Positions 3,179-56,311 of a DNA stretch of 64,000 nt are shown piece by piece. Within the stretch, counting starts at the first letter, position 1. Every line of letters begins with the position of its first letter. The notes beneath the pieces were generated by a model. The model saw only the letters and a list, made by a program, of their open reading frames with translations. It was not told the DNA's origin and ran no database searches. Origin of the DNA: Octopus sinensis (taxonomy: Eukaryota); NCBI RefSeq assembly GCF_006345805.1, contig NC_043019.1:19219360-19283359 (forward strand), written 5' to 3'. Position numbers and translations under genes: made by a program.

Positions 3179-3412
3179 CCACAGCAGGGTCAACAGAGAC
3201 CCCTGAGCCGCAAAAGGAGGGTAAAGCTGTTGAAACTGTGAGTGTGCAGACTGAGGAGACAGCTGCTGACAGAGAAAAGCCGGTACTGTACGATATCAAC
3301 ATCCAAGAACATGCACGGCCAGAAAATACACCACTTCGTATCAATTTCAACCTGCCTCCGCACACTTGTCCAAAATCAGTATCTGAACCTACTCCAGAGG
3401 AGGAATCTCAAG
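3179..3412 (+). CDS. QT-repeat exon 1 (234 nt): ...KAVETVSVQTEE...YDINIQ...TPLRINFNLPPHTC...
   Basis: Acceptor TTTCTTTAATTTCAG ends at 3178; donor CAAG|GTATTT; 78 open codons. Confidence 0.8.
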
Positions 3413-6400
3413 GTATTTATCCCATTGGACTCTCTGTCTGATTGTGTGTCTGTCTGATGATCACTTGGTCTTACTATTATATAAGTGTCAAAAATATATT
3501 ATTGTAAAGTGCCTTCACAGTTTTAAAAGGATTCTATCACTGTATTGCATGAGATGGAGATTTTTGTGAACAGATCTGCCAGAAATTACTCAAAATTGTA
3601 CATTTCCAAATAAATCACCAACCTTTTAATGAGCACCTTTGCCAAAATCTTAAAATTCTTGTTGAGTTCAGCTTTAGGTCATTGCATCATCCCCTGCAAC
3701 TATTGTACTTAGCTGTTTAGTCCAGAATCTGTTTTTTTTTTCAGAAATACATCAACTAGACATCCAAATTTTATATAGAAATGCTGAACTAGATGAATGT
3801 TACCATGTACCATTGTCTTATCTTTTATAATTATAGGAGACAAACAGACCTAATCAATGCTATGTTTGACTTTCTTTCATTTCAGCTACACCAGAATCAT
3901 CTGACTCACAAAAAGAAGATCAAGTTACTGGTGGTGTGGGTGTACAAACTGTTGAGACAGGTGATGATAGGCCGAAACCAGTGCGGTACAAGATCAACAT
4001 CCAAGAACACGAGCGCCCAGCTTCCTCACCACTCCATATCACTGTGAACCAACCTCGTCATACCTGTCCAGCATCAACAGGTCAATCCCCTCCAGGTAAC
4101 ATTTGGATTCTCTGTCCAACTCTGGCTCAGTCAGTCTGTCTTTGTTTGATCATCCGAACACCAGCTCCAATGTCTGTCTCTTTCATTGTTTGTATAACTG
4201 TCCATCAATTTGTTGATTCATCTGACGTCAGCTCAGTTGTTCAACCATGCACGCCCGTTTAACCTTCACTTATAGAAGTGTTGGGAATAATAAAAAAGAA
4301 TCATTTAAAAAAATAGATAAACTACAAAATACAAAACTCCTCAAAACAAATACTTCGAGAAGGGGCCAAGATATTTCCTTTCTAAAGGATTCATGGTGAT
4401 GACTTCACAGTTAAGGATTGGGGAAATATCCAGTTGTAAAGATGCCCCCCACCCCATCCAAAAAAGAACTTAAATGCAAATAGTGAGAGAGAGATATAAA
4501 ACACTAAAATAAAAAAAAATAATTAACTTAAAAACTTCCTTAATTTCAGCTAATTTCAGCTAAACCAAAGCCTTTATGGGTTCAATAGAATTAAAACAAT
4601 ACCACTTTTCATTTTCTCTCTCTTGTATCTATGATGTTTAATAGGAATCTCTCATGCATAAGGAGTATTCCCAATGTGGTGGTGGATGTATATTAAATGT
4701 TGTATAGGCTGTGGCATATACCACACATCACACACAGCTTTTAATCATAATCAGAGGGCAGATCTAATTACTAAATTGGACCTAGATAATTAATGTGTTC
4801 TTAGATGAAGCGGATTACTGGAATGGTTTGTCCTGACTCAAAGGTAGAATTGAACTTAGCACCATACGATAACGAACCACTCGTTAATTATGCAGTGTCC
4901 TCACAGCAGACAGCAGAGAGATGTTTCTAGCCTACATCAGCTACTTTCAGTTTGGTGGAGTGGACCAATTGAGAGTTAACTATTATTGCCATGGTGACAA
5001 TGATATACCAGGTATAGGAGATGAACCTTTGACCTTGGGCTGATTGCCCAATATTCTGGACATTTCCACATCTACATCCTATGAATATTTGTGGTTAGTA
5101 AAAATAAAACAAAACCTGCACCGGAGTCACAACTTTGTACAGAAGTGATGAATGACACAACTTCACATTGCTTCTCCCCATCACCAGAATAACACTTTGG
5201 GTTCAATCAAAAAGAGCCAATCAATATTTGTAGGGTTTTCATATCAATCCACACCAACTGAATATAGAAACACATTATTACAAACTAGCAATAACATCTC
5301 TCTTAAAGCTAGACAACCTTATGATTAATTTCAGCTACACCACAGCCGGCCGAAAAGCCTAGAATTATGAAGGACCTGAGTGTACAGACAGGTGAGAATG
5401 GTGCTGAAAAGTCAAGCCCAAACCAGTACCAGTTCAATATGCCAAAGCAGTCAGGTCCGGGATCCTCACCAATAAGTATCCATGTGAATGTACCGCCTCA
5501 TGACTGTCAATCATCAATGTCATCAACAGTTAAACGGCCGTCAATCAGAGACAGTCCAGGTAAGTAAATTGGTCCAGTGGAGTTGTGTGTTTGTGTTGTA
5601 GTGGAAATGGTACTCCCCTTCCCCTGTATCAAAGTCAGAGAGGTCAGTAGAAGTAGAGTCGTTTGAATGAGTCATTCTCAGTTGGAGTCAGAGTCAGTTA
5701 TGTGTTGTACACGAGTTCGAGTTACTGTCAAGGTAGCCGTTTAAAAGTCATTGTCTTGCAGAGCTATCAGCAAAAGCATGATAGACGAGTCACAGATAAT
5801 AGACGTGGAATGCCACTGCAACATAATAGTGGCAACAAGGATATAAACAATTCATGTGGACAAAGTTGAAAAAAAAGATTTTTTCACAAGAAAATAAACA
5901 ATTCATGCAGACGACATTGAAACATTTTTCTCATGGACAAATTAAAAACTCAACAGAGGAATAACGAATATTTTTGTCATATATATTTTACAAAAATCCA
6001 TAAAATTATGGGATACTTTTAGAGGGTTTAGTTGAGTTGCAAAAACTGAAACAACAACAAATGTTACAGCAACAAATGCTGCAACTAATGAAGTTGGTAA
6101 GAAAACCCCAAAAATACATTTTCGCCAGACCACGTAGCAAATTCAATAAATGAACGAGAAATACCTATTTCTTTACTGCCCACAAGGGGCTAAACATAGA
6201 GAGGACAAACAAGGACAGACAAACGGATTAAGTCGATTACATCAACCCCAGTGTGAAACTGGTACTTAATTTATCAACCCCGAAAGGATGAAAGGCAAAG
6301 TCGACCTCGGCAGAATTTGAACTCAGAACGTAATGACAGACGAAATACTGCTAAGCATTTCGCTCGGCGTGCGAACGATTCTGCCAGCTCGCCACCTTAA

Positions 6401-12400: not shown

Positions 12401-15400
12401 TATGAAGAACTAATTAGTGTTATGCTTAACTTTTTCTTCCTTTCAGACTCACAACAGCCACCAAAAAGACCTAAACAAGTTGGGGACATGAGTGTACAGA
12501 CTGATGATGCTACTAGCAAACCAAAGATAACGCAGGTAGACAAGCATGGACACGTGTATATCAATGTGAAGGTACCTCCTCACAACTGTACCCTGCAGAC
12601 AGCCAACCCCAACTTAGACAACAGCACTCAAGGTAACTAAACTCTCTTGCATTCAGTTCAGCTATGTGTCTGCCTGCCTATCAATTTGAATGAGTGCCTC
12701 TTTGAGCATCTGACCACCAGCTCAATTAGATATCTGTCTGTCTGTCTATTTACTGGTCTTTGTATCTATCTCTTTATCAGTCTGGTTGCATGTCTAACAG
12801 TCTGTCTCACATATAATTATCTATCACGTGATAATGAAGATGAGGATGTGACTCTGTTTAATTGATTGGCTCTCCATTTCGTTTTTCTTGTCCAGTTTAA
12901 CTCAAAAGAAGTTTAATGTTTGAGGCAGGATCCTTCGTTGGAGGCCCTGAAGCAATGGATTCCATTCAAGAAACTAATTCTGAACTTTTTGTTCTTACTA
13001 TTTGCTGACCATCAGTTGCTTTCTCGTGTCTAGTGCTTACTCTCCCTCTCTCTCTCTCTCTCTTCCACTACAGCCTGACCAACAGGCCTACATCTAACCA
13101 ACAGCCTGTCTTTCTGTCTCTAAGACCTTCTCAATGGCAATGTGCTTATGCCAACAATGGCCGTTCACTTGGTTCACTTGGTACATTAGAAATAATAAAA
13201 ACATTACAATATAGACAAACCACAAACAAACAAACTGCTCAACACAAAACTTGTAAAAATTAGCTGTTTTAGGGAGCAACAACATCCCCTGAGAGGAGAA
13301 CCTAATCTTAAGAAGGGAACCTATTCCTACAAAAGAAAGCCACATCCATACTTTTAGGGAGCAGCAACATCCCCTGAGAGGAGAACCTAATCTTAAGAAG
13401 GGAACCTATTCCTACAAAAGAAAGCCACATCCATACTTTTAGGGAGCAGCAACATCCCCTGAGAGGAGAACTTAATATTAAGAAGGGAACCTATTCCTAC
13501 AAAAGAAAGCCACATCCATACATTTAGAGAGCAACAACATCCCCTGAGAGGAGAACCTAATCTTAAGAAGGGAACCTATTCCTACAAAAGAAAGCCACAT
13601 CCATACTTTTAGGGAGCAGCAACATCCCCTGAGAGGAGAACCTAATCTTAAGAAGGGAGCCTATTCCTACAAAAGAAAGCCACATCCATACTTTTAGGGA
13701 GCAGCAACATCCCCTGAGAGGAAAACCTAATCTTAAGAAGGGAACCTATTCCTACAAAAGAAAGCCACATCCATACATTTAGGGAGCAACAACATCCCCT
13801 GAGAGGAGAACCTAATCTTAAGAAGGGAACCTATTCCTACAAAAGAAAGCCACATCCATACATTTAGAGAGCAACAACATCCCCTGAGAGGAGAACCTAA
13901 TCTTAAGAAGGGAACCTATTCCTACAAAAGAAAGCCACATCCATACATTTAGGGAGCAACAACATCCCCTGAGAGGAGAACCTAATCTTAAGAAGGGAAC
14001 CTATTCCTACAAAAGAAAGCCACATCCATACATTTAGGGAGCAACAACATCCCCTGAGAGGAGAACCTAATCTTAAGAAGGGAACCTATTCCTACAAAAG
14101 AAAGCCACATCCATACATTTAGGGAGCAACAACATCCCCTGAGAGGAGAACCTAATCTTAAGAAGGGAACCTATTCCTACAAAAGAAAGCCACATCCATA
14201 CTTTTAGAGAGCAACAACATCCCCTGAGAGGAGAACCTAATCTTAAGAAGGGAACCTATTCCTACAAAAGAAAGCCACATCCATACATTTAGGGAGCAAC
14301 AACATCCCCTGAGAGGAGAACCTAATCTTAAGAAGGGAACCTATTCCTACAAAAGAAAGCCACATCCATACATTTAGGGAGCAACAACATCCCCTGAGAG
14401 GAGAACCTAATCTTAAGAAGGGAACCTATTCCTACAAAAGAAAGCCACATCCATACATTTAGAGAGCAGCAACATCCCCTGAGAGGAGAACCTAATCTTA
14501 AGAAGGGAACCTATTCCTACAAAAGAAAGCCACATCCATACATTTAGGGAGCAACAACATACCCTGAGAGGAGAACCTAATCTTAAGAAGGGAACCTATT
14601 CCTACAAAAGAAAGCCACATCCATACATTTAGAGAGCAACAACATCCCCTGAGAGGAGAACCTAATCTTAAGAAGGGAACCTATTCCTACAAAAGAAAGC
14701 CACATCCATACATTTAGGGAGCAACAACATCCCCTGAGAGGAGAACCTAATCTTAAGAAGGGAACCTATTCCTACAAAAGAAAGCCACATCCATACATTT
14801 AGGGAGCAACAACATCCCCTGAGAGGAGAACCTAATCTTAAGAAGGGAACCTATTCCTACAAAAGAAAGCCACATCCATACATTTAGGGAGCAACAACAT
14901 CCCCTGAGAGGAGAACCTAATCTTAAGAAGGGAACCTATTCCTACAAAAGAAAGCCACATCCATACATTTAGGGAGCAATAACATCCCCTGAGAGGAGAA
15001 CCTAATCTTAAGAAGGGAACCTATTCCTACAAAAGAAAGCCACATCCATACATTTAGGGAGAAACAACATCCCCTGAGAGGAGAACCTAATCTTAAGAAG
15101 GGAACCTATTCCTACAAAAGAAAGCCACATCCATACTTTTAGGGAGCAACAACATCCCCTGAGAGGAGAACCTAATCTTAAGAAGGGAACTTATTCCTAC
15201 AAAAGAAAGCCACATCCATACTTTTAGGGAGCAGCAACATCCCCTGAGAGGAGAACCTAATCTTAAGAAGGGAACCTATTCTTACAAAAGAAAGCCACAT
15301 CCATACATTTAGAGAGCAGCAGCATCCCCTGAGAGGAGAACCTAATCTTAAGAAGGGAACCTATTCCTACAAAAGAAAGCCACATCCATACATTTAGGGA

Positions 15401-18400: not shown

Positions 18401-21400
18401 GATCTTTTGCTCTGTAATACTAACTTCAGGAAGCCTGCCAGTCACCTGTTCACCTACCAGTCTGGTGGGTACACAAATCAGATTGAATACATTCTCGCCG
18501 AGAAATGAGAAAGAGGGTTACTTATAAATGCCAAAACATTCCCAAGTGAAGAATACAGCCCACAGCATAGGTTAGTAGTTAGCGACTTCAGGATCAGGGC
18601 TAAATGACTGTGGAAGCTTAAGGATTCTGTGAATGGACAGAGATTTAGAGAGGTATTACTTGAAGCTTTTGATGAAAAAGAGAAAGATATAGCATCCTGT
18701 TGAGGGCCACTGACCAGATCTGTGGCTGGTGCAAAGTCCCCTCTTGACCTAAGGTAACATGGTGGTGGAACAATGTAGTTGACAGGGCCATTAGGGAAAA
18801 GAAACAGGCCTGGAAGGACAGGAAGAATGGTGGTAGCAGGGAACTGTATCAGATTGCCAGAAGGGAAGCTAGGAGACAAGTTTATTTAGTCAGAGGGGAA
18901 GCAGATAAGAAAAATTTGCCAATGTTCTGTGTTGTGAGGGCCAGGGACTTGAAGTGTTTCATGTTGCAAGACAGTATGTAAAAGATAACCGTGATGTCGA
19001 GAAATGTGTCTTCATGGATGATGGCTCACTTGCATTTAATGAGGCTGCAAAGAGAGAGACCTGGAGACACCACTATGAAGAATTGCTAAATGAAGAGAAT
19101 GAATGGGAGAAAGAAAGTCTACCAAATGTTGATCCAACAGAGGAACCAGCTATCCAAATTGACAGTACCTTGGTAGATAAAGCAATTAAGGGTATGAATG
19201 GTTAGTGAGAGCTGTACAAGCCATGTACAGGGATGCTGTCAGTAAGGTGAGGGTTGGCAGTGAGTATAGTGAAGAATTCCGGGTAGGAGCAGGGGCTCAC
19301 CAAGGATTATTCCTCAGCCCCCTCTTATTCATCATAGTCCTCCAGGCAATAACAGAGGAATTCAAGACAGGATGTCCCTGAGAGCTCCTCAATACTGATG
19401 ATCTTGCTCTAATAGCTGAGTCACTATCAGAACTAGAGGAAAAGTTTCAGGTGTGAAGCAAGGTCTAGAATCAAAGGGCCTTAGAGTCAATCTAGCAAAA
19501 ACCAAAGTCTTAGTAAGCAAGAAGGCAGACAAATCACAAATCCCTTCAGGTAGATGGCCCTGCTTGATCTGTGGAAGTGGCGTAGGTAGAAACTCCATAA
19601 GATGTACTCCATGTAAACTATGGATAAATAAGAGGTGCAGGCTAACTGAGAAGATAGTTTTTGTGTGTGGCAGATGCACAGGAGTAATGAACACCGAAGA
19701 TGTACAGAAAACAGATCCCATCACATGCTAAGGGGAAAAACTACAAGTAGCTGATAGCTTCTGTTATGTAGGTGACCAAGTCAGTAGCTGGAGTGGATGC
19801 TCTGAGAGCATAGCTGCTAGAATAAGAATAGCCTGGACAAAGTTCAGAGAGCTGTTACCTCTGTTGGTTACAAAGGGCTGTCACTCAGAGTGAAAGGTAG
19901 ACTGTATGATGCATGTGTGCAAACTGCCATGCTATGCAGCAGTGAAACATGGGCTGTGACTGTTGAGGACTGTGTAAGCTGGCAAGAAATGACGCTAGTA
20001 TGCTCCGCTGGATGTATGATGTCAGTGTGCATACACTGACATTACACATCCAGCAGAGTGTAAGCACCCTGAGAGAAAAGTTGGACATAAGAAGCATCAG
20101 GTGTGGTGAGCAAGAGAGACAATTGCACTGGTATGGTCATGTGTTGTGTATAGATGAGGACAGCTGTGTGAAAAAGTGTCACACGCTAACAGTAGAGAGA
20201 ACTTGTCAAGGAGGTAGACCCAGGAGGACCTGGAATGAGGTAATGAAGTTTGACCTTCGAACATTGAGCCTCACGGAGGCAATGACAAGTGACCAAAACC
20301 TTTGGAGACATGCTGTGCTTGAGAAGACCTGGCAAGCCAAGTGAGACCATAACCATGGCCTATGCCAGTGTTGCCCATTTAAGACTATTCTTCAATCATT
20401 GGGCAAGATACTGTGCTTGAGAAGACCTGTTGAGTCAAGTGAAATCATTGTCATGGCCAATGTCAGTACCGTCTGCCAGTAGCACATAAAAGGCACTATT
20501 TGAGCGTGTTGGTACCAGTCCCGCTGGACTGGCTCCCATGCAAAAAGTACCATAGAACGTGGTCAATGTCAGTGCTGCCTGACTGGCTCCCATGCCAGTG
20601 GCACGTAAAAAGCACCACTTGAGTGTGGCCAATGCCAGTGCCACCTGACTGGCTCCTGTACTGGTGGTATGTAAAAAGCACCCACTATGCTCTCGGAGTG
20701 GTTGGTGTTACAGAGGGCGTCCAGCTGTAGAAACCTTGCCAGATCAGATTGGAACTTTTTGCAGCCTCCCGGCTTGCCAGTCCTCAGTCAAACCATCCAA
20801 CCCATGCCAGCATGGAAAGTGGATGTTAAACGATGATGATGATGATGATGATACACACACACACACAAACACACACATACACATGTATATATATACATGC
20901 ACATATAATGGTTTAATGATGAACTAATCAGTGCTATGTTTGATCTTTAATTTCAGCCAACCAAAGGCAATCGAGACCAGCTACATTTAATAACGATGTA
21001 GGTATGCAGACCCGTAATACACCTGTTGATGATTCAAAGATGATGCCGGCTAAAAATCAGTATTATGTACTCCCAGATGGTAAACCTGTCTGTATTACTT
21101 TGAACACACCTTCTCACACCTGTCAACAAGCAGCAACACAACCCAACTCCATTGGCAAAACTTCAGGTAACTAACAAAAACTACTACTGTGTGATTAGGT
21201 CAGATTGCTCATCTAATCCTCTGATTACACTGGTCAACAAGTATTTTTCATCAAGCACGTGTCATGGTGTACTTAGTGTAGTTTTTAATGCTGATTTCAA
21301 ATATACAATTAGATTTTTGACATCATGTACAGTTTTCAAGATGAGAAAGCTTTTTGGTTTTAGCTCATTCCAATTAATGAGGTGTATGCATGCATTTCAT

Positions 21401-27232: not shown

Positions 27233-27271
<39 letters not shown>

Positions 27272-30200
27272 CTGTTGGATCAGGTAATGAAGGTCACGGA
27301 GAGGGTCATAGCCCAACTAATTAGAGAGAGAGTTAGTTTAGATGAGATGCAGTTTGGGTTCGTGCCAGGGAAAAGTACCACTGATGCTATATTTCTGGTG
27401 AGACAGCTGCAGGAGAATTACCTAGCCAAAGATAAGCCCCTGTACCTGGCTTTTGTTGACATGGAGAAAGCCTTCGACAGGGTCACCTGATCCCTTATCT
27501 GGTGGTCAATGAGGAAACTAGGGATAGATGAATGGTTAGTGAGAGCTGCACAAGCCATGTACAGGGACGCTGCTAGTAAGGTGAGGGTTGGCGACGAGTA
27601 CAGTGAAGAATTCCGGGTAGAGGTTGGGGTCCACCAAGGTTCAGTCCTCAGCCCCCTCCCATTTATCATAGTCCTCCAGGCAATAACGGAGGAATTCAAG
27701 ACAGGTTGCCCCTGGGAGCTCCTCTATGCTGATGACCTTGCTCTAATTGCTGAGTCGCTATCAGAACTGGAGGAGAGGTTTCAGGTGTGGAAACAAGGAT
27801 TAGAATTGAAGGGCCTTAGAGTCAACCTAGATAAAACCAAAGTCCTAATAAGTAGGAAGGTTGACAAATCACAAACGCCTTCAGGTAGATGGCCCCGCTC
27901 AATCTGTAGAAAAGGCATAGGTAGAAACTCAATAAGATGCACCAAATGTAAGCTATGGACACATAAGAGGTGCAGCAATGTCAAAGGAAGGCTAACTAGG
28001 AAAATAGTTTTTGCATGTGGCAGATGCTCAGGAGCAATAAACACTGAAAATGCGCAGAGAGCAACTTTCCCCACATTCCAGGGAGAAAAACTAGAAATAG
28101 TTGATAGCTTCTGTTACTTAGGTTACTTCCGTTACTTAGGGGCAGGTGTGCTGAAAGTGTAACTGCTAGAGTAAGAATAGCCTGGGCAAAGTTCAGAGAG
28201 CTCTTACCTCTGCTGGTGACAAAAGGCCTCTCGCTCAGAGTAAAAGGCAGACTGGATGACGCATGTGTATGAACAGCCATGCTACATGGCAGTGAAACAT
28301 GGGCCGTAACTGCTGAGGACATGCATAAGCTCGCAAGAAATGAAGCCAGTATTCTCCGATCGATGTGTAATGTCAGTGTTCATACTTGACAGAGTGTAAG
28401 TACCTTGAGAGAAAAGCTGGACCTAAGAAGCATCAGTTGTGGTGTGCAAGAGAGACGTTTGCGCTGGTATGGTCATGTGGCAAGAATGGATGAAGATAGT
28501 TGTGTGAAAAAGTGCCACACCCTAGCGGTTGAGGGACCCTGTGGAAAAGGTAGACCCAGGAAAACCTAGAACGAGGTGGTGAAGCATGACCTTCGAACTT
28601 TAGGTCTCACCGAGGAAATGACTAGAGACCGAGACCTATGGAAGCCTGCTGTGTGTGAGAAGACCTGGCAAGACTAGTGAGATCATAACCCGTGGCCTCT
28701 ACATGGGATGGAGCCAGTCCACTTATGCATAACTTTCCTTCTTGGGACACAAAACTCTACTTGTGAAGACCTGTTGAGGCAAGTGAAAATCGAAATCGAT
28801 CAACATCAATTGAAAATGCAGCTATGATACCAGTGCTGGGGGCATGTAAGAGAACCATACGAACTGGCCGTTGCCAGTACTGCCCTGACTGGCCTCCATG
28901 CCGGTGGCACGTAAAAAGCGCCATATGACCGTGGCTGTTGCCAGCCTCGCCTGGCCTCTGTGCTGGTGGCACGTAAAAAGCACCATGTGATCATGGCTGT
29001 TGCCAGCCTCGCCTGGCCTCTGTGCCAGTGGCACATAAAAAGCACCATCTGATCGTGGCCGTTTGCCAGCCTCGTCTGGCACCTGTGTCGATGGCACATA
29101 AAAGCACCCACTACACTCACGGAGTTGTTGGCGTTAGAAAGGGCATCCAGCCGTAGAAACATTGCCAGATTAGACTGGGCCTGGTGCAGCCTTCTGGCTT
29201 CCCAGACCCCAGTTGAACCATCCAACCCATGCTAGCATGGAAAGCGGACGCTAAACGATGATGATGATATATACATGTATATGTATATGTATATATACAT
29301 GCATACATACATGCACATATAATGGTTTAATGATGAACTAATCAGTGCTATGTTTGATCTTTAATTTCAGCCAACCAAAAGCAATCGAGACCAGCTACAT
29401 TTAATATGAATGAAGATATGCAAACCCGTAAGACACCTATTGACGATTCAAATTTCATGCCGGCTAAAAATCAGTATTATGTACTCCCAGATGGCACACC
29501 TGTCTGTATCACTTTGAACACACCTTCTCTCACCTCTCAACAAGCAGCAACACAACCCAACACCACTGGCATAACTTCAGGTAACTAACAATAAGCTACT
29601 CTGTGTGATTGTGTCAGATTGTGTGTCTAATCCTCTGATTAGTGTTCTGATTGCTTGTCCGTCTGTTTGATCATCTGACTTCCCTTTTACCTGCCTACTT
29701 CACTGTTTAGCTATCTAATTACCTGTCTAGCAATCTGCCTTCTAGACAATGCCTGCCTCTACCTGTCTCCAAGAGCCTGTGTTTTATTGTCTGTGTGATT
29801 GATAGCTTACACCCACATTGGGGGCCTTCTGAAAGGAATTCTGAGAGTAATGAAAAGCATTTCAAATGGACTATGAAAATAGGAAACTTCCCAACATAAA
29901 TACTGTAGAAATCAGTTTATTTAGGGATAAATAATCTTTATTAAGGATTATATCATTAAAGACAAAAAAATAACCTGTACACACACTCCAAACCTCCAGC
30001 ATTAACAACACATATGCCTGCAAACAACTCATACATGGGACACATGTGTACACATGGTAGTTACCTGTACATGTATCCATATGTGTGTTCTTGTGTGTGT
30101 GTGTGTACATACATATAGATATATTCATGCATACATGTATAGGGAAAAAGAGAACACATATGCTGAACTATGGAGAAATCTGCAGTCACTCTATCCAGAT

Positions 30201-33200
30201 TACAAGTTCAGGTTTATACGTTTAATTATTGGAGCACTGGGGTATATAACACAATGCCTAAATACCAATCTTGAGAAATTAGGCTTCTCAAAACCAGAAA
30301 GGAGAAAGCTAATTTGAAGACTACAGATCCAGTCCATCACTGGAACTGTAGAAATCTGTAAAACATTCCAGAAGTTTACCATTTTAATATATATAAGAAT
30401 ATCTAGATATGCAAGTATATGCATGAGAATACATACCTAAAACAAAATATACAAATCTGCACGTATAGATACATACATACAAACAAAAATACCGTGTTGT
30501 TGATGTTGAAATTCCAATGAAAGAGCCTTGGATCTAGGTTTGAAACTGGCTCTTTCTCTATTGGCAAGAAATCTTGAAATAGTTGACACATACATACAAA
30601 CACTCATACATACAATTATACACATACATACATACATATGTGCACGAACTTGTGCCTATGTACGTATGTGAGGTCTAATCAACAAGTATCCTGACTGGTT
30701 TTATAAAAACAAAACTACATGTACCAATTTGGCATTTAATTTCCTTCAAAGTAGACCCCTTTGGAAGCCATGCACTTATTCCAGCATTGTGTCCATTCAT
30801 GGAAGCATTCCTGGAACTCATTTTCTGGGATAATCAGCAGTTGCCTAGTGGCACTCACTTTGATTTCCTCAATGTCCTGGAATCTTCTCTCTTTCAACGA
30901 GTATTTGATTTTTGGAAAGAGGAAAGAGTTGCAGTGGCTGTTGGACCTGGAAAATGCTGTGCCTAACCAAAACCTGCTGCACAAGCTGCACTGAAGGGGT
31001 GGGTGCATTGTCATGGTGCAATTGCCACTCACCGAACGCATGCAGTTGTGGCCTTTTCTGATGAATAGCATTCTGCAATCACTGCTAAATGTCACGGTAG
31101 TAGTCTTTGTTTCCTGTCTGACCAGGTGGAGCATACTCATGATGAAGAATCCCCTTGTACTTGAAGAAAATGGTCAACAGTTTCTTCACATTGTTTCAGT
31201 CTCGGAGAGATTGGAGGTCTTCCACTGCAAAGATTGAGCCTTTTTTTGGGGTCATAGCTATAGATATATGATTCATCACCCATTATGATGATTCCAAAAA
31301 GTTTTTATCGTTCTTGGCACAGAAAAGGAGATCTCGGGCAACTGAAACCCCAAAGTCTTTTTGTTCAGCTGAAAGCAGTTTTGGCAGAGACTTGGCAGAC
31401 ATGCATCTCACACCCAAATCTTCAGTGATAATGGACTGTAACTAATCTGCACATCCTCTGATAACTCACGGATGGCAATTCGATGATTTTACCTCACAGG
31501 GCTGCACGTACATCTGTGATGTTTTTCTCAGTTCTGCTGGTTGTGGGTCTCCCAGAACATTTGTCAATATTAACATTTTTTGGCCCTCTTCGAAATGTCT
31601 GAACCACTCATACACTTGTGTGCAGTTCATACACTCTTCTCCATACACTTTCTGCAACTTTGTGTAGACCTCTGAGCAGGTATTGCCAAGCTTTTGGCAA
31701 AGTTTGATGTAGATTCTCTGTTCAACTTTCTCTGTCATGGTCAATGCCATAATCACACGCTACACACGTTCCTTCCAAGCACTGCTGTAAACAGTGGAAG
31801 TGAGCTAGAATGTTAATAGTGTACATGCATAGCAGAGTTCACGGTCAATCTGTGCCAAACAGCTTCCCTCTGTGTGCTTTAGCTTCATCACTATGGCAAC
31901 AGTCCAGATACTTATTGGTCAGACCACGTACATGATGACTGCAAACCAATGATTTAGTATGGCCATCGCCTGATAGAAAGTCTTACACAAGCAATGCTCA
32001 TATAGGACTCTTCATTCCAGCCAAAGACCACACGGTTGACAAGTGTGAATGATGTTGGAGCTCTTTTGCGATTTATCCTTGTGTATTTTCATATGGTGCT
32101 TGAGGCCTCCTGAGGAGGCACATTATTATCCACAACTCTGACACCTTTTCATTTCATACTCAGTGTAGTCCACGGCTGGTTTGGTAAGATGACTGCATTG
32201 AGGGCTTTTCACTCCTACCATACTCAGATAAATGCACCTACATCAATTACAAGTTACTTCATTGCCCAGATGAAATTTCGATAACAGCTCAGGGTGTCCT
32301 TTCTAGCGTTTCTTTCACACTTCTGATGTTCCCTTCTCTGTAATTCAGATTCTTTTGTCCCCTTTTTGATGCTTTTTTTCCAACTTCCTTCCTCTAATGC
32401 TTTATTTTCCCACTCATCCAATTCGTGTCTTAATCAATGTTTGCTTCACATAACCCTTGAACCCCATCTTTAGTTTATATCTTGGGTGCTTCCCTTGAGC
32501 TAGTTGCTTTGGTATCCTTTGGTCATCCATTCTCACCACATTCCCACACCACCCAAGACGGTGCTGTTGAATGATAATTTCCATAATAGAGTAGCTACTC
32601 CCTACTAACACCTCCATTTGATTCCTGCAAAATAGCAGGAATCAACTGGAGGATGAAAGCATTTATGAAAGTGTTCCAGCCTCTTCAGAAGCCACCTAAG
32701 GTGTGGCACCTCAGATTTACATGCATCAAGCAGCAAAGAGAATGCACTACTTTTGTACGCTTTCATTTCTGTATCCTTCAAAATCCCACACTGTTATCAA
32801 AGACAATTGTTCAATTTTCCAAAAGTGTCACTTGCTTTCCCGATGCAAAGGAAGATTTTGTCATCCTGAGTACCAGAACTGTTTAGGCTACTTCCCAAGT
32901 ATACAAAGATGTCTGCAACCTTGTGCCGCTTTCCATAAACAAACACTGTTGACCAATTCTATTCTCTTTTTCTTAAGAAGTTCTTGTATGCTTTGATTAC
33001 AAACCAATCTTTGTGCGTTCAGGACATAAAAACAAGCACCTCTCTGCAAATTTTGATAACATTTTCTCTGAAATAATCCCAGCTGTTATGTCAGGTCACT
33101 CTTGGGCACCACCGGTAACATGCAACCCAGTACAACTTGCTGTACAGTCTGGTTGTTGGCAACTAAACTGGCAACCCCATCAAGCTTGCTTGATGAGGAG

Positions 33201-35399
33201 GGTGACTGTTCAATACCCTGCAGGACATAAATTAAACCCTGTCAAAGGGTGGAAGAACTCATGAATAGTCAACGCCCATCCAGCAATATATATATACATA
33301 TGTACACATGCATGCATATGCGGAGACATGGAAATTCTTGGGTTGGTGTCCAGGCATGTGGCTAGCCCACTGTGTATGTTGTTGTCACAACATACATACA
33401 CACATATTCATATACATATACATACATGCTTGCATGCACATATAATGTTTAATGATGAACTAATCAGTGATATGTTTGATCTTTAATTTCAGCCAACCAA
33501 AAGCAACCGAGACCAGCTACATTTAATAAGGACGTAGGTATGCAGACCAATATGACATCTAGTGACGATTCAAATTTGATGCAGGCTAAAAATCAGTATT
33601 ATGTACTCCCAGATGGCACACCTGTCTATATCACTTTGAACACACCTTCTCTCACCTCTCAACAAGCAGCAACACAACCCAACACCACTGGCATAACTTC
33701 AGGTAACTAACAACAAGCTACTCTGTGTGATTGTGTCAGATTGTGTGTCTAATCCTCTGATTAGTGTTCTGATTGCTGGTCTGTCTGTTTGATCATCTGA
33801 CTTCCCTTTTACCTGCCTACTTCACTGTTTAGCTATCTAATTACCTGTCTAGCAATCTGCCTTCTAGGCAATGCCTGCCTCTACCTGTCTCCAAGAGCCT
33901 GTGTTTTATTGTCTGTGTGATTGATAGCTTACACCCACATTGGGGGCCTTCTGAAAGGAATTCTGAGAGTAATGAAAAGCATTTCAAATGGACTATGAAA
34001 ATAGGAAACTTCCCAACATAAATACTGTAGAAATCAGTTTATTTAGGGATAAATAATCTTTATTAAGGATTATATCATTAAAGACAAAAAAATAACCTGT
34101 ACACACACTCCAAACCTCCAGCATTAACAACACATATGCCTGCAAACAACTCATACATGGGACACATGTGTACACAGGGTAGTTACGCAATATGTACAAC
34201 TCACATACATGTGTACACACACATACAAGATACGCATACATGCATTCAGACCACACATACATAGCACAAACACAGCAACTGCAAACACGAACAAGTTTGG
34301 CACAAATACATTGCACACACACACACACACACACATGAAATAATCATTAAAACTCGATATTTATGCAGAAAAGAAGAGCAGCAAAGGTGATGCAGGCCGA
34401 AATACCTGAGCAGTGATCTGACTGCTGACCACTGATGGACATCTGCCACTTAAAGTGATGATTCCATTCTACCCCGGGTGCCCACAGTTCACATTGTCTA
34501 TCTACACAGTATGGAGTCAGTTCCTTTTCTGCATAACAAACGAAGCCATTCCTCTCAGACTAGCAGAGTCGTCTCTTCTTTTCAGTTGACTAAAACTTTG
34601 GTTTATGTCAAGTTGATTCTAGGTTTTGCTTCCAGGTCTGGAAATTCTTGTCTATGTCTGCTCCAAGGAGTAGGCTATCAGCATGTAGGAGTGGCCATCC
34701 GACTGCTGGTCTTAATCTTCTCTGCAATGGGAGATTCAGTGTCTGTCCTCTGCATATGAAAGGAAATGTTCTCTTACTTAATGATGGTCAAGAGGTTCAT
34801 GCAGAGGATCATGTTTTCCTCTAACCATCCGACTATCATGTGTGTAGCATTGGCATGGTAACGGCTTTAATTTCAGCCATCCGAAAGCAATCAAAACCAG
34901 CCACATTTAATAAGGATGTAGGTATGTAGACCAATATGACATGTAGTGACGATTCAAATTTGATGCAGGCTAAAAATCAGTATGATGTACTCCCAGATGG
35001 CACACCTGTCTGTATCACTTTGAACACACCTTCTCTCACCTCTCAACAAGCAGCAACACAACCCAACACCACTGCCAAAACTCCAGGTAACTAACAACAA
35101 GCTACTCTGTGTGATTGTGTCAGATTGTGTGTCTTATCCTCTGACCATCACTCTGATTGCTAGTCTGCCTTTTGCATGCCTACTTCACGGTTTCCTTTCT
35201 TCTCTCCCTCTTATAGGTATGTATGTATGGCTGGCCAGTAACGTATTTTTCTGCAATATTTGGATAATTTATCCTGTCCAGGCTATTTTATTAGCAGTAT
35301 CACATGTTTGAGAATAAATTGTTTCTCTATCTTTCAATTCATCTCAACGCTTCTAAAGGAAACTTTGTTTAGTTTCATTGTAAGTTGTATGTATGCACA

Positions 35400-35431
<32 letters not shown>

Positions 35432-35910
35432 GGGAAATATCTGTTTGCGTGATAACAGGTGATAGGAAGGGCATCTGACTAGAAAACTTGCCTCAATCAA
35501 CTGTGAGACTCATGTAAGCATCGAGAATGGTCATTAAAATGATGATGACGGTGATGACGATGATGATAATGATGATAATGGCAACCCTGAACCAGAATTG
35601 AAGACAGAAATATTTCAGTTCATGAACGTCACGCCATCTCATTGTCTCTTCTCTTATAAGAACAGAACTCAGTGGTTTAGTGAAAAACTAATCAACTCTA
35701 TCTTTGATTTTTCAGCCAGCCCAGCACAGTCAAAGAGATCTAGACTGAAGGAGGATGTAGGTGTGCAGGCTGGTGAGATACCTGACAATTCAATGAAGAC
35801 ACAGGTCAGCAATCAGAACTATGTGCTTCCAGATGGCTCACCTCTCCATTTCACTTTCAACAGGCCACCAAAAGCAACAGTGCAACCTACTTTGAATAGA
35901 AAAATTCCAG
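3179..35910 (+). CDS. Uncharacterised multi-exon gene (partial) with tandem exons encoding LC8/DYNLL-type QT motifs: join(3179..3412,3886..4095,5335..5559,12447..12632,20957..21166,29371..29580,33493..33702,35716..35910)
   Basis: Eight homologous exons, each TTCAG|..CAG/AAG|GT, each a multiple of 3 and phase 1-1. Spliced length is 1680 nt with no stop. Start and end of the gene are not securely located. Confidence 0.8.
3886..4095 (+). CDS. QT-repeat exon 2 (210 nt): ...TGGVGVQTVE...YKINIQ...SPLHITVNQPRHTC...
   Basis: Acceptor TTTCTTTCATTTCAG; donor CCAG|GTAACA; open; homologous to exon 1. Confidence 0.85.
5335..5559 (+). CDS. QT-repeat exon 3 (225 nt): ...MKDLSVQTGE...SPISIHVNVPPHDC...
   Basis: Acceptor TAATTTCAG; donor CCAG|GTAAGT; open. 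Confidence 0.85.
5594..8090 (+). mobile_element. Degenerate, internally deleted Ty3/gypsy LTR retrotransposon
   Basis: Diverged LTRs at about 5594-5823 (TG..CA, followed by PBS-like TAGTGGCAAC) and about 7822-8070 (preceded by polypurine AAAAAGGGAGGAGGGG). Gag zinc knuckle KCFHCGNTGHIKSYC at about 7080-7125. RT N-terminus KEKATPIFRP...VPF...ELERLE...SDWAAPTVYVKK at 7640-7800. Confidence 0.75.
6150..6398 (-). mobile_element. tRNA-derived SINE (family B) inserted in the LTR element
   Basis: Minus-strand head GGTGGCGAGCTGGCAGAATCGTT...GAGTTCAAATTC and body GTCGACTTTGCCTTTCATCCTTTCGGGG. Related copies at 37720-38312 and 45380-45560. Confidence 0.75.
9892..11172 (+). mobile_element. Mariner DNA transposon, full length, transposase pseudogene
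   Basis: TIRs TGGGGTCATCCCATAAATAATGCG / TGCATTATTTATGGAATGACCCAA, with left TA. Remnants MEVTRENIWHILLYEF, WVPHKL, IVTSDKKW, HQDNA, HPPYLPDIAPS carry stops and frameshifts. Confidence 0.9.
12447..12632 (+). CDS. QT-repeat exon 4 (186 nt): ...PPKRPKQVGDMSVQTDD...HVYINVKVPPHNC...
   Basis: Acceptor TTTTTCTTCCTTTCAG; donor CAAG|GTAACT; open. Confidence 0.85.
13267..16987. repeat. 85-bp tandem satellite, array 1 (about 44 units)
   Basis: Unit TTTTAGGGAGCAGCAACATCCCCTGAGAGGAGAACCTAATCTTAAGAAGGGAACCTATTCCTACAAAAGAAAGCCACATCCATAC. The period of 85 was counted directly. There are no spacers. Confidence 0.97.
17866..20850 (+). mobile_element. RTE-clade LINE, older and degenerate, with internal deletions (APE + RT) and (TGA)n tail
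   Basis: APE motifs LRVGTLNIGTLNGR, CCIQEVRW, SAYGPQ, AGNFNGHVG. RT/C-terminal remnants HQG..LSPLLF, LHWYGHV, GRPRRTW. The 3' UTR ends in GATGAT repeats at about 20850. Confidence 0.9.
20957..21166 (+). CDS. QT-repeat exon 5 (210 nt): ...TFNNDVGMQTRN...YYVLPDGKPVCITLNTPSHTC...
   Basis: Acceptor GATCTTTAATTTCAG; donor TCAG|GTAACT; open. Confidence 0.85.
21228..23544 (+). mobile_element. Chapaev3-like (CMC superfamily) DNA transposon, degenerate transposase
   Basis: Termini CACTGGTCAACAA / TTGTTGGCCAGTG with a 3-bp TTA TSD (21225-27, 23545-47). Remnants CRNQPDVFCYVCG, GDLKVI, TKYCCFLCLWDSR, HIKLG-like LYIKLGLMKQFVK, HLDFF..NLGAVSDEHGERFHQDI. Confidence 0.85.
23555..24652 (+). repeat. Recent intronic segmental duplication, near-identical to 33775-34866 and partially to 29650-30056
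   Basis: Direct sequence identity, with duplicate ORFs in the track (23777/33993, 24263/34478). It contains an eroded antisense RTE fragment (QTWKQNLES...TKVLV) at about 24250-24500. Confidence 0.9.
24880..25113 (+). repeat. Unique-type left flank shared by both satellite arrays (copy of about 13040-13266)
   Basis: About 230 bp near-identical, from the (CT)n run to GTAAAAATTAGCTG, directly before each array. Confidence 0.9.
25114..26820. repeat. 85-bp tandem satellite, array 2 (about 20 units)
   Basis: Same unit as array 1; 1707 bp. Confidence 0.97.
27272..29270 (+). mobile_element. RTE-clade LINE, 5'-truncated (RT to 3' UTR), younger subfamily
   Basis: QFGFVPGKSTTDAIF, FVDMEKAFD, HQGSVLSP, LYADDL. 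Single-unit 3' UTR with (TGA)n tail. It begins in a (TG)n tract. Confidence 0.92.
29371..29580 (+). CDS. QT-repeat exon 6 (210 nt): ...TFNMNEDMQTRK...YYVLPDGTPVCITLNTPSLTS...
   Basis: Acceptor ends 29370; donor TCAG|GTAACT at 29581; open. Confidence 0.8.
30143..30590 (+). mobile_element. 3' end of an RLE-type (R4/NeSL-like) non-LTR retrotransposon
   Basis: EKENTYAELWRNLQSLYPDY...IIGALG...LEKLGF...LQIQSITGTVEICKTF resembles the restriction-like endonuclease C-terminus. Confidence 0.6.
30669..31928 (-). mobile_element. Mariner DNA transposon (second family), degenerate
   Basis: TIRs GAGGTCTAATCAACAAGTATCCTGACTG / CAGTCCAGATACTTATTGGTCAGACC. Remnants MTEKVEQRIYIKLC...VYEWF, LHHDNA, FLFPKIK, YFEGN*. 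Confidence 0.88.
32020..33000 (-). mobile_element. RTE-BovB-like LINE 3' remnant
   Basis: FVYLGSSL...GKASDTFGKL, HRLGWCGNVVRMDDQRIPKQL, and a terminal CQSCG..GLKHHMKIH-like motif. Confidence 0.65.
33493..33702 (+). CDS. QT-repeat exon 7 (210 nt): ...TFNKDVGMQTNM...YYVLPDGTPVYITLNTP...
   Basis: Acceptor ends 33492; donor TCAG|GTAACT; open. Confidence 0.82.
34877..35086 (+). pseudogene. QT-repeat exon 8, pseudoexon (or 45-nt truncated exon)
   Basis: Paralogue of exon 7 with CAG>TAG at 34927-29 (the Q of MQT). The native acceptor context is deleted upstream of 34865. Confidence 0.8.
35716..35910 (+). CDS. QT-repeat exon 9 (195 nt): ...KRSRLKEDVGVQAGE...YVLPDGSPLHFTFNRP...
   Basis: Acceptor CTAAT..TTTGATTTTTCAG; donor CCAG|GTAACT; open. 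Confidence 0.82.
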
Positions 35911-54548: not shown

Positions 54549-54583
<35 letters not shown>

Positions 54584-55981: not shown

Positions 55982-56012
<31 letters not shown>

Positions 56013-56269: not shown

Positions 56270-56311
56270 TACATATCTGAGTATATATATATAAGAAATA
56301 TATATATATAG

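What the first reader, a model, noticed from the sequence alone, without database searches (positions are those of the whole stretch)
3179..35910. Exon-per-motif array encoding a putative multivalent LC8 (DYNLL) scaffold
Seen: nine homologous, symmetric phase 1-1 exons each carry a single QT-type motif: ETVSVQTEE, GGVGVQTVE, KDLSVQTGE, GDMSVQTDD, NDVGMQTRN, MNEDMQTRK, KDVGMQTNM, KDVGM*TNM and EDVGVQAGE. They sit in S/T/P/Q-rich, probably disordered sequence, and the motif is conserved while linkers diverge strongly. Known: the LC8 hub binds [DS]-x-x-[TVI]-Q-[TV]-[DE] strands, and multivalent partners such as ASCIZ/ATMIN, Nup159 and 53BP1 use repeated QT sites, including VQT/IQT variants. Inference: this is a protein I do not recognise whose LC8 valency grows by whole-exon duplication, with about 60-78 aa between sites. 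Because every exon is 3n and same-phase, any subset can be skipped in frame, so splicing could tune valency. Basic patches (PPKRPK, KRSRLK) and many S/T-P sites hint at nuclear or cell-cycle control.
Basis: partly seen in the sequence, partly recalled or inferred. Interest (0 to 1): 0.82.

Follow-up and report, generated by a model that had tools for sequence, protein, structure and literature searches.

The report
Octopus repeat-exon gene with LC8-like motifs
The window holds the 3' two-thirds of an octopus-only gene whose disordered protein is built from 14 duplicated exons, each carrying one G-V/M-Q-T motif that resembles validated binding sites for the dynein light chain LC8, but no binding has been shown.

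Summary
All nine motifs sit at the stated places, each in one exon with canonical AG/GT sites, a length divisible by three and phase 1-1.

The window is Octopus sinensis chromosome CM016881.1. The gene is RefSeq XP_036368543.1, "proteoglycan 4-like". That name is compositional: there is no Pfam domain, signal peptide or transmembrane segment. The gene is larger than the finding:
- Five more repeat exons lie upstream of the window.
- A terminal exon lies at 46653-46717 and encodes ...RPRRVKCCCHK.

The O. bimaculoides ortholog (XP_052831867.1, 968 aa) splices all 14 repeat exons plus this tail. The O. sinensis model skips E5-E7 and stops at the TAG in E8.

The only element shared by all unit types is [DE]-hydrophobic-[GS]-[VM]-Q-T. 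Three short units keep nothing else. VQT anchors are validated LC8 binders (SON, MAST1, ZFPM1). The flanks, scored without the anchor, look like binder flanks at about 9-10 sites. AlphaFold2 finds no fold.

LC8 scaffolding is the best hypothesis (about 0.45) but is untested. MQT, VQA and VQY anchors are unvalidated, spacing is long (41-75 aa), constraint is weak (dN/dS 0.63), and a second conserved block is unexplained. No data bear on splicing-tuned valency or nuclear control.

The parts
3179..3412 (+). Repeat exon E1 (234 nt, phase 1-1). Motif ETVSVQTEE at 3232-3258. Second block PLRINFNLPPHTC.
   Evidence: 100% identical to XP_036368543.1 residues 321-398.
3886..4095 (+). Repeat exon E2. 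Motif GGVGVQTVE at 3930-3956. Two in-frame acceptors lie 9 nt apart, at 3886 and 3895. RefSeq and O. bimaculoides use the 3895-type site.
5335..5559 (+). Repeat exon E3 (225 nt). Motif KDLSVQTGE at 5370-5396.
   Evidence: A homologous exon exists in a more distant octopod (P0003/L004).
12447..12632 (+). Repeat exon E4 (186 nt). PPKRPK at 12458-12475. Motif GDMSVQTDD at 12482-12508, the best LC8-type score in the protein.
20957..21166 (+). Repeat exon E5 (210 nt, young E5-E8 class). Motif NDVGMQTRN at 20992-21018. Not in the O. sinensis RefSeq model.
29371..29580 (+). Repeat exon E6 (210 nt). Degenerate motif MNEDMQTRK at 29406-29432, with poor flanks. Not in the O. sinensis RefSeq model.
33493..33702 (+). 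Repeat exon E7 (210 nt). Motif KDVGMQTNM at 33528-33554. Not in the O. sinensis RefSeq model.
34877..35086 (+). Repeat exon E8 (210 nt). It has TAG at 34927-34929 where the other E5-E8/U10-U13 copies have CAG (the motif Q). The RefSeq CDS joins E4 to E8 and ends at this TAG.
35716..35910 (+). Repeat exon E9 (195 nt). KRSRLK at 35733-35750. Variant motif EDVGVQAGE at 35751-35777. Present in the O. bimaculoides model.
46653..46717 (+). Terminal coding exon (acceptor ...ccttgtag|GC, phase 1). It encodes (G)CHMVSCPAIRPRRVKCCCHK followed by TAG. AATAAA lies at 46835.
   Evidence: tblastn with the O. bimaculoides C-terminus gives 18/21 identities, E 5e-13. Sequence read. The region is colinear with the O. 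bimaculoides 3' end at 88%.

Best explanation
Shown:
- The window contains the 3' part of a single octopod-restricted gene (O. sinensis XP_036368543.1; O. bimaculoides XP_052831867.1).
- Its roughly 900-970 aa product has an N-terminal amphipathic helix, then 14 tandem units of 41-86 aa, each encoded by one symmetric phase-1 exon, then a short basic, Cys-rich tail.
- The array arose by exon duplication and is still being homogenised and remodelled.

Inferred:
- The one element that every unit keeps, [DE]-[VLIM]-[GS]-[VM]-Q-T-x-[DE], is an LC8/DYNLL-type beta-strand motif. It is a hybrid of the classical GIQVD and TQT types.
- LC8 dimers would bind the same site on two chains and zip two copies of the disordered protein into a flexible ladder with up to about 10-14 rungs. 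Many individually modest sites would gain strength through avidity.
- The conserved MG... start (a myristoylation-type pattern) and the polybasic CCC tail may tether this ladder to a membrane.
- Exon gain, exon loss, gene conversion and possibly exon skipping would change the number of rungs.
For: Gene structure:
- Canonical splice sites, 3n lengths and phase 1-1 hold for all 14 repeat exons in both species.
- The O. bimaculoides RefSeq model joins all of them plus the terminal exon.

The motif is the core of the unit:
- In the alignment of 28 units, Q is present in 27 of 28 and T in 24 of 28. The surrounding sequence is 20-50% identical.
- The short units R3-R5 retain only this block.

Likeness to LC8 sites:
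- The validated binder list includes RCVSVQTD (SON), RHQSVQTE (MAST1), SDKGVQTP (ZFPM1), KDLGIQVD (DNMT3A) and NNIGIQTM (53BP1).
- With a PSSM built from those 79 binders, GDMSVQTD scores 12.9, KEIGVQTD 12.1, EDLGVQTD 11.6 and ETVSVQTE 10.8. Binders score a leave-one-out median of 13.1 and a 10th percentile of 8.9.
- Eight to ten sites per protein score 9 or more, against 0.7-0.9 in shuffled sequence.
They are 2.8-5.0 at 8 of 13 O. sinensis sites and 2.9-5.75 at 8 of 14 O. bimaculoides sites. Binders have a median of 3.4 and anchor-containing non-binders -0.3.

Interchange of T, V and M at position -1:
- An unrelated family of coiled-coil, tail-anchored proteins carries arrays in which GTQTD, GVQTD and GMQTD alternate within one protein.

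Context:
- There is no signal peptide or transmembrane segment (maximum 19-residue hydropathy 0.64).
- Composition is P/T/K/Q/S-rich, with no Trp.
- AlphaFold2 gives mean pLDDT 32 for the full protein. One unit with a 22-sequence alignment gives pTM 0.18 and no secondary structure.
- Multivalency can rescue weak, non-canonical sites, as shown for KANK1.
Against:
- No site has a TQT anchor or matches the ELM expression [^P].K.TQT.
- MQT (E5-E8), VQA (E9) and VQY (R3 in O. sinensis) are absent from the validated binders.
- GGVGVQTV, MNEDMQTR and KGEGMQTS have non-binder-like flanks.
- Peptides that look as good (LDTSIQTE, VDRSIQTV) are documented non-binders. My PSSM separates binders from anchor-containing non-binders poorly.
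- Spacing of 41-75 aa is much longer than in Nup159, ASCIZ or KANK1, so cooperativity may be low.
- A second block (P-L-H-I-x-V-N-x-P-P-H-T-C) is conserved in the nine long unit types. In unit R1 a contiguous 51 aa is invariant apart from two substitutions (I/V, T/S) across three octopods. A short linear motif alone does not explain this.
- Overall dN/dS is 0.63, and dN is at least dS in the E5-E8 class.
- Between the two species the 8-mer windows are not clearly better conserved than the rest.
Confidence: 0.45

Rival explanations
1. The unit is a roughly 50-aa module that binds some other partner or folds on binding. It would have three strand-prone segments (GVQT, Y-x-I-N-I-Q-E-H, P-L-H-I-x-V-N) plus P-P-H-T-C. 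On this reading the LC8-like look of the first strand is coincidental.
For: - The second block is conserved in all long units.
- In R1 the whole stretch QKLVKVLEDLGVQTDA.AMDGEKKMQYQINIQEHARPACSPLHINLSLPPH.CP is invariant in a third, more distant octopod, while its flanks have diverged.
- R1 has dN/dS 0.16.
- The full-length AlphaFold2 model draws low-confidence strands at exactly these three segments.
Against: - The short units R3-R5 keep only the QT block.
- AlphaFold2 with 22 paralogous units predicts no secondary structure and pTM 0.18.
- The H and C of the second block are lost in E6-E8 and in some O. bimaculoides units.
- There is no Pfam or PDB sequence match.
Confidence: 0.3
2. The protein is a weakly constrained, fast-evolving disordered spacer or low-complexity protein. 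The shared QT block is kept mainly by common descent and gene conversion among exons, with no dedicated reader.
For: - dN/dS is 0.63 overall and 1 or more in R2-R5, E2 and the E5-E8 class.
- Exon identity is about the same as intron-flank identity, around 0.9.
- Species-specific substitutions are shared by R3-R5 and by the E5-E8 and U10-U13 exons, which shows concerted evolution.
- Homologues are found only in octopods among 1.84 billion representative proteins.
Against: - The QT core survives between unit classes that are otherwise only 20-30% identical, which is too old a split for conversion to explain.
- All 14 exons keep frame, phase and splice sites in both species.
- In the eight young exons one stop is observed against about 3.7 expected if substitutions fell at random. 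This gives a rough P of about 0.05, and the copies are not independent.
Confidence: 0.15
3. In O. sinensis the distal exons E5-E9 are decaying or unused duplicates (pseudo-exons). The real product would be the 619-aa RefSeq protein that ends at the TAG in E8, so nine functional motifs are encoded (four of them in the window) rather than thirteen or fourteen. This concerns the 3' half only and is compatible with any of the functional readings above.
For: - The RefSeq CDS runs E4 to E8 and stops at 34927-34929.
- E8 carries the stop inside the motif, and the E6 motif has degenerated to NEDMQT.
- dN is at least dS in this class.
- E8 shares only 12 nt of the conserved acceptor region with its paralogues.
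Against: - O. bimaculoides models from two annotation rounds join the four corresponding exons, E9 and the Cys-rich terminal exon.
- E5, E6, E7, E9 and the terminal exon are intact, with canonical splice sites, in O. sinensis.
- The tail is 18/21 identical between the species.
- A stop in E8 followed by further exon junctions would normally trigger nonsense-mediated decay, whereas skipping E8 keeps the frame.
Confidence: 0.2

Closest known systems
ASCIZ/ATMIN (multivalent LC8 client; 11 sites in human, 7 in Drosophila)
   Same: It is a long disordered region carrying many QT-type motifs of unequal strength. It includes a G-V-Q-V site (ISTGVQVN) and several D-hydrophobic-x-TQT sites. LC8 dimers bridge two chains.
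   Different: There is no sequence homology and no zinc fingers. ASCIZ anchors are mostly TQT, whereas here there are none. Spacing here is 41-75 aa. Here each motif is a separate symmetric exon.
KANK1 L2 linker (15 or more weak non-canonical LC8 sites; membrane-proximal rod)
   Same: Many individually weak or non-canonical sites act through multivalency in a disordered linker of a cortex-anchored protein. The octopus protein also has possible membrane-anchoring termini.
   Different: KANK1 relies on short, uniform linkers to form a stiff rod. The octopus units are long, so at most a flexible ladder is expected. There is no homology. Anchoring here is only inferred from sequence patterns.
GKAP/DLGAP1, nNOS and DNMT3A 'G-I/V-Q-V-D' class of LC8 sites
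   Same: G at -2, a branched hydrophobic residue at -1, Q at 0, an acidic residue at +2, and often D or S at -4 with a hydrophobic residue at -3. Compare KDLGIQVD and LSIGIQVD with EDLGVQTD and KEIGVQTD.
   Different: Position +1 is T here, as in TQT sites, rather than V. Those proteins have one or two sites, not fourteen.
Proteoglycan 4 / lubricin (the RefSeq name of the gene)
   Same: Only the P/T/K/S-rich repetitive composition.
   Different: There are no SMB or hemopexin domains, no signal peptide, and no KEPAPTT-type mucin repeats. The name is an automatic low-complexity match.
Unnamed coiled-coil, tail-anchored proteins with [MW]G[TVM]QT[DE]P arrays (P0004, P0011, P0016, P0020, P0024)
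   Same: They carry tandem arrays of the same G-[V/M]-Q-T-[D/E] core in a disordered segment next to a membrane anchor.
   Different: The architecture is unrelated (a long coiled coil and a C-terminal transmembrane helix). The genes are intronless, lie in compact eukaryotic genomes, and their organism is unidentified. The match is confined to the motif.

Membership tests
LC8/DYNLL-binding short linear motif | Anchor triplet: Q at position 0, with T, V or I at -1 and T or V at +1 | tested here: met
   VQT is present in 8 of 14 units in O. sinensis (R3 is VQY) and 9 of 14 in O. bimaculoides. VQT anchors are validated binders in SON, MAST1 and ZFPM1.
LC8/DYNLL-binding short linear motif | Anchor validity of the MQT (E5-E8), VQA (E9) and VQY (R3) variants | tested here: inconclusive
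   None of these occurs among the 79 validated binders. Indirect support for MQT comes from the T/V/M interchange in the P0011-type arrays.
LC8/DYNLL-binding short linear motif | Strict ELM expression [^P].K.TQT | tested here: not met
   No unit has K at -3 together with TQT. The expression itself matches only 13 of 67 known sites.
LC8/DYNLL-binding short linear motif | Flank preferences: an H-bonding D or S at -4, a small G or S at -2, D, E or P at +2, and no proline before the anchor | tested here: met
   Flank-only PSSM scores are 2.8-5.75 at 8 sites per protein, and above 1 at 11 of 13 (O. sinensis) and 10 of 14 (O. bimaculoides). Binders have a median of 3.4 and non-binders -0.3. Three sites fail.
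LC8/DYNLL-binding short linear motif | Motif lies in an intrinsically disordered region accessible from the cytosol or nucleus | tested here: met
   AlphaFold2 gives pLDDT 32 for the full protein, and pTM 0.18 with no secondary structure for one unit. Composition and the charge-hydropathy plot fall on the disordered side. There is no signal peptide or transmembrane segment. The alignments were shallow.
LC8/DYNLL-binding short linear motif | Direct binding to LC8 (Kd in the micromolar range, strand in the dimer groove) | not testable with these tools
   This needs ITC, pull-down or multimer modelling.
Known multivalent LC8 clients (ASCIZ/ATMIN, Nup159, KANK1, RSP3, FAM83D) | Sequence or domain homology to one of these proteins | tested here: not met
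   There are no Pfam domains. A profile search of 1.84 billion representative proteins returns only octopod sequences plus motif-only or spurious hits.
Known multivalent LC8 clients (ASCIZ/ATMIN, Nup159, KANK1, RSP3, FAM83D) | Closely spaced sites (short linkers) that give cooperative ladder or rod assembly | tested here: not met
   Q-to-Q spacing is 41-75 aa. KANK1 packs seven LC8 dimers within a 126-residue construct.
Proteoglycan 4 / lubricin | Signal peptide, SMB domains, hemopexin domain | tested here: not met
   Pfam finds none of these domains. The N-terminus is acidic and non-hydrophobic.

The most novel reading that the evidence does not exclude
This is an octopod-specific, lipid-anchored disordered protein that recruits up to about 14 LC8 dimers through exon-encoded G-[V/M]-Q-T sites. 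Each binding site is a separate symmetric exon, so valency evolves by exon duplication, gene conversion and loss (for example the TAG in E8 of O. sinensis). Valency could also be set per tissue by exon skipping. That would be a natural system in which the number of hub-binding motifs is a spliceable, countable trait.
Probability: 0.15. Interest if true: 0.75.

Novelty: new member of a known kind. Interest (0 to 1): 0.45.

Why it matters
If LC8 binding is real, this would be one of the highest-valency LC8 clients. It would also be the only one, to my knowledge, with a strict one-motif-one-exon layout. It would offer a clean case of how short-linear-motif valency is created and tuned, by duplication, concerted evolution, loss and possibly splicing. 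It would add V/M at position -1 to the usable anchor set. It would also give an uncharacterised, lineage-restricted cephalopod gene a testable function.

If binding is not real, the locus is still a tidy example of tandem exon duplication in a fast-evolving disordered protein. It also flags two annotation problems: the 'proteoglycan 4' name, and the truncated O. sinensis model.

Tried and rejected
- Pfam on both orthologues returned nothing above threshold.
- A PDB sequence search with the conserved N-terminus plus R1 returned nothing.
- Word-indexed searches of 5.8 billion proteins and a full HMMER profile search of 1.84 billion representatives found only octopod proteins or exons (P0001, P0002/P0008/P0009, P0003, P0031). 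They also returned motif-only hits (P0004) and spurious bacterial Ig-like hits via 'LPDGTP' (P0005-P0007). No squid or other mollusc homologue was found.
- A search for a tenth exon copy in the window found none.
- A literature search for the gene identifiers and for 'proteoglycan 4-like' plus octopus found nothing.
- I looked for transcript evidence for E5-E9 in O. sinensis. No protein in the collection contains them. The Logan contigs that matched are genomic, not spliced.
- I considered and dropped several other readings of the motif: TRAF, SIM, PIP-box, LIR, Keap1 ETGE, and FHA or CK2 sites. The residues required are not consistently present across the units.
- I considered a zinc-binding reading of the H...H.C positions. 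It was dropped because the ligand positions are not conserved among units.
- My home-made PSSM cannot replace LC8Pred. It separates binders from anchor-containing non-binders only weakly on full scores and better on flanks.
Full report

Yes. A six-frame scan finds all nine peptides and both basic patches on the + strand at the stated places. Each lies in a short open frame preceded by a pyrimidine tract ending in 'tttcag' and followed by 'AG|gtaa'. Taking the phase-1 acceptor and donor gives nine exons:

| Exon | Coordinates |
|---|---|
| E1 | 3179-3412 |
| E2 | 3886 or 3895-4095 |
| E3 | 5335-5559 |
| E4 | 12447-12632 |
| E5 | 20957-21166 |
| E6 | 29371-29580 |
| E7 | 33493-33702 |
| E8 | 34877-35086 |
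| E9 | 35716-35910 |

All are 186-234 nt, divisible by three, and phase 1-1. A nucleotide profile of the exons finds these nine copies (E 1e-32 to 1e-57) and no others in the 64 kb. E8 has TAG at 34927-34929, at the position of the motif's Gln codon.

**2. Which gene is it?**

The spliced peptide hits two protein clusters among 5.8 billion:
- XP_036368543.1, 'proteoglycan 4-like', Octopus sinensis (P0001, 619 aa; accession).
- An O. bimaculoides cluster containing XP_052831867.1, 'proteoglycan 4' (P0008, 968 aa), and the older partial model XP_014783056.1.

The window is identical to O. sinensis chromosome CM016881.1 (locus L001, offset 56795). E1-E4 and the first 17 codons of E8 match P0001 at 100%. 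So the O. sinensis RefSeq coding sequence joins E4 directly to E8 and ends at the E8 TAG (gene end = window 34929). It leaves out E5, E6, E7 and E9.

The first 320 residues of P0001 lie upstream of the window. They comprise two short exons encoding an N-terminal helix and five further repeat exons, R1-R5.

The O. bimaculoides locus (L002) has 14 repeat exons. All have AG/GT sites, 3n length and phase 1-1. That model includes four intact E5-E8-type exons, the E9 orthologue, and a terminal exon encoding GCHMVSCPALHPRRMKCCCHK.

The terminal exon is also present in the window at 46653-46717. Its acceptor is ...ccttgtag|GC. It encodes CHMVSCPAIRPRRVKCCCHK plus TAG, with 18/21 identities to O. bimaculoides (E 5e-13). 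AATAAA lies at 46835. It spans about 93 kb in O. sinensis against 32 kb in O. bimaculoides. The difference comes from satellites and transposon fragments in the introns.

**3. Anatomy of the repeat**

I aligned the 28 units from the two species. One block is present in every unit type: [DE]-[VLIM]-[GS]-[VM]-Q-T. Q is present in 27 of 28 units (the exception is the E8 stop) and T in 24 of 28 (the exceptions are VQY in O. sinensis R3, VQA in E9 of both species, and E8).

The three short units R3-R5 (41-50 aa) keep only the QT block. The QT block is therefore the minimal conserved element of the repeat.

Q-to-Q spacing is 41-75 aa.

**4. Evolution**

- Copies share intron flanks. E5-E8 share 280-780 bp at 83-96% identity.
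- Within a species the young exons are more alike (0.93-0.96) than between species (0.82-0.89).
- R3-R5 share species-specific substitutions (APQPDS versus ASQPDT).
- Together these show that the array undergoes concerted evolution or repeated duplication.

Constraint is weak overall. dN/dS between the two species is 0.63. It is low in R1 (0.16), E1, E3 and E4 (0.30-0.39), about 1 or more in R2-R5 and E2, and dN is at least dS in the E5-E8 class.

The frame is nonetheless maintained. If substitutions fell at random, about 3.7 of the eight young exons should carry a stop, and only one does. This gives a rough P of about 0.05, and the copies are not independent.

Two Logan contigs from more distant octopods carry single homologous exons:
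- The E3 homologue keeps both blocks.
- The R1 homologue keeps a contiguous 51-aa core unchanged, apart from two substitutions (I/V, T/S), while its flanks have diverged.

No homologue outside octopods was detected in a full HMMER search of 1.84 billion representative proteins.

**5. Is it disordered and cytosolic?**

- There is no Pfam domain and no PDB relative.
- Composition is P/T/K/Q/S-rich, with no Trp and 0.7% Phe. The protein falls on the disordered side of the charge-hydropathy plot.
- The maximum 19-residue hydropathy is 0.64, so there is no transmembrane segment, and the N-terminus is acidic rather than signal-like.
- AlphaFold2 on the 619-aa protein gives mean pLDDT 32, with only a helix at residues 13-38.
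- One unit with an alignment of 22 paralogous and orthologous units gives pLDDT 63, pTM 0.18 and no secondary structure.
- The alignments are shallow, so this argues against an autonomous fold but does not prove its absence.

**6. Does the motif look like an LC8 site?**

I took the 79 validated binders and 32 anchor-containing non-binders of Jespersen et al. 2019 (PMC6607443, Table S4).

VQT anchors with G or S at -2 are validated: RCVSVQTD (SON), RHQSVQTE (MAST1) and SDKGVQTP (ZFPM1). Close relatives of the octopus sites are also binders: KDLGIQVD (DNMT3A), LSIGIQVD (GKAP) and NNIGIQTM (53BP1).

A log-odds matrix built from the binders gives these scores:

| Sequence set | Score |
|---|---|
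| GDMSVQTD | 12.9 |
| KEIGVQTD | 12.1 |
| EDLGVQTD | 11.6 |
| DNVSVQTD | 11.2 |
| ETVSVQTE | 10.8 |
| MQT sites | 7-9.9 |
| GGVGVQTV, EDVGVQAG | 4.7-4.8 |
| Binders, leave-one-out median | 13.1 |
| Binders, 10th percentile | 8.9 |
| Non-binders, median | 9.3 |

The proteins have 8-10 sites scoring 9 or more, against 0.7-0.9 in shuffled sequence. The sites are homologous, however, so they are not independent events.

A flank-only score is more telling, because it ignores the QT triplet by which the motif was spotted. It is 2.8-5.75 at 8 sites in each species. Binders have a median of 3.4 (IQR 1.5-5.0) and non-binders -0.3. Three sites have poor flanks.

A chance hit of the profile search adds indirect support. 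It is an unnamed family of coiled-coil, tail-anchored proteins from compact eukaryotic genomes. Arrays within a single protein alternate MGTQTDP, WGTQTDP, MGVQTDP and MGMQTE. So T, V and M are interchangeable at -1 in arrays whose T-versions have the textbook G-TQT-D core.

**7. Cautions**

- None of the octopus sites matches the ELM expression [^P].K.TQT. That expression captures only 13 of 67 known sites.
- MQT, VQA and VQY are not validated anchors.
- Peptides that look equally good (LDTSIQTE, VDRSIQTV) do not bind.
- Linkers are long compared with KANK1, where seven LC8 dimers pack within a 126-residue construct.
- The second conserved block and the invariant 51-aa R1 core are not explained by an 8-residue motif.
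- Between the two sequenced species the 8-mer windows are not clearly less variable than the rest (10 changes in 80 positions, by my count). Only the four core residues are (2 in 40). The species are too close for a real test.

**8. Most likely mechanism**

Shown: a 14-unit, exon-modular, disordered, octopod-restricted protein with conserved termini.

Inferred, at about 0.45: the G-[V/M]-Q-T strand of each unit inserts into the LC8 dimer groove. LC8 dimers pair two chains into a flexible multi-rung ladder. Many modest sites add up through avidity, as documented for KANK1, where no single peptide binds measurably.

Inferred, more weakly: the conserved start MGVDENN fits the N-myristoylation pattern, and the tail RPRR[VM]KCCCHK looks like a polybasic palmitoylation cluster. 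The ladder may therefore be membrane-tethered. The K-R patches (PPKRPK, KRSRLK) are conserved in O. bimaculoides, but they do not by themselves indicate nuclear or cell-cycle control.

Exon skipping would be in frame for any subset. Whether it happens is unknown. The E5-E7 skip in the O. sinensis model could be real or an annotation choice forced by the TAG in E8.

**9. Comparison with known systems and novelty**

If it works as proposed, it works like ASCIZ/ATMIN, Nup159 or KANK1 L2, but it is homologous to none of them. It is not a proteoglycan 4 (no SMB or hemopexin domains, no signal peptide).

I file it as a candidate new member of the class 'multivalent LC8 client'. Its distinctive features are one motif per symmetric exon, a V/M-only anchor set, long spacers, and putative lipid anchors.

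The gene itself is already annotated. The functional proposal is new as far as the searchable literature shows.

Interest is moderate. The hypothesis is attractive, cheap to test, and has some independent support from the flanks. But it is unproven, and even if true it extends a known principle.

Noticed in passing
window 13268-16987 and 25114-26821: Two arrays of the same 85-bp satellite (43.8 and 20.1 copies, 97% matches) sit in the E4-E5 and E5-E6 introns. They account for part of the threefold size difference of the gene between O. sinensis (about 93 kb) and O. bimaculoides (32 kb).
   Followed up: partly
window 23553-24651 versus 33769-34866 (and 29647-30064): A 1.1-kb intron segment is 99.5% identical between the E5-E6 intron and the E7-E8 intron. 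The neighbouring exons are only 86-93% identical. This suggests recent gene conversion, recent segmental duplication, or an assembly artefact.
   Followed up: no
window 5553-5559 and 12441-12447 (E3/E4 junction); window 3886/3895: The RefSeq protein reads ...RDISDSQQ..., whereas canonical GT-AG splicing of this genome gives ...RDSPDSQQ.... The RefSeq junction would need a non-AG acceptor. 'IS' is what the O. bimaculoides genome encodes, so the O. sinensis model may have been shaped by cross-species protein alignment. E2 also has two in-frame acceptors 9 nt apart.
   Followed up: partly
window 17873-20344, 27149-28162, 39357-39926 (-), 43956-45077 (-), 48911-49537, 59448-59912, 31466-31756 (-), 6887-7264: The introns and the downstream intergenic region are filled with transposon fragments. 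These include LINE-type reverse transcriptase with a PHD-like finger (RVT_1, E 1e-13 to 1e-14), an Exo_endo_phos endonuclease, a Mos1-type HTH_48, and weak CCHC zinc-knuckle ORF matches (E ~4e-3, below the Pfam cut-off).
   Followed up: partly
window 42306-43894 and 49551-52926: Tandem arrays of a 206-345-bp unit, plus 62-63-bp sub-repeats, lie in both orientations downstream of the terminal exon (window 47.2-54.4 kb). They carry repeated ORFs starting MEFVSLWYQCRWHTR. This region has no colinear counterpart in the 3 kb of O. bimaculoides sequence compared.
   Followed up: no
P0004, P0011, P0016, P0020, P0024 (loci L003, L007, L008; not in the window): This is an unnamed protein family with an N-terminal coiled coil, an array of 2-10 [MW]G[TVM]QT[DE]P motifs, and a C-terminal transmembrane anchor. 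The genes are intronless and lie in compact eukaryotic genomes or metagenome bins (for example GCA_020064025.1). It looks like another uncharacterised multivalent QT-motif protein. The organism was not identified.
   Followed up: partly
N-terminus of the protein (upstream of the window, L001 10001-20727) and window 46653-46717: Both termini are conserved. MGVDENNMDF fits the N-myristoylation pattern. Residues 13-38 form an amphipathic helix with an L-xx-AI-xx-ML-xx-I spacing reminiscent of docking helices. The tail RPRR[VM]KCCCHK is a polybasic Cys cluster. None of this was tested beyond pattern matching.
   Followed up: partly
window about 54383-56943: This region is colinear at 79-84% with the sequence downstream of the O. 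bimaculoides gene. In O. bimaculoides the next gene encodes a DUF4590 protein. Synteny is therefore kept, and the next gene should start near the 57-kb mark of the window.
   Followed up: no
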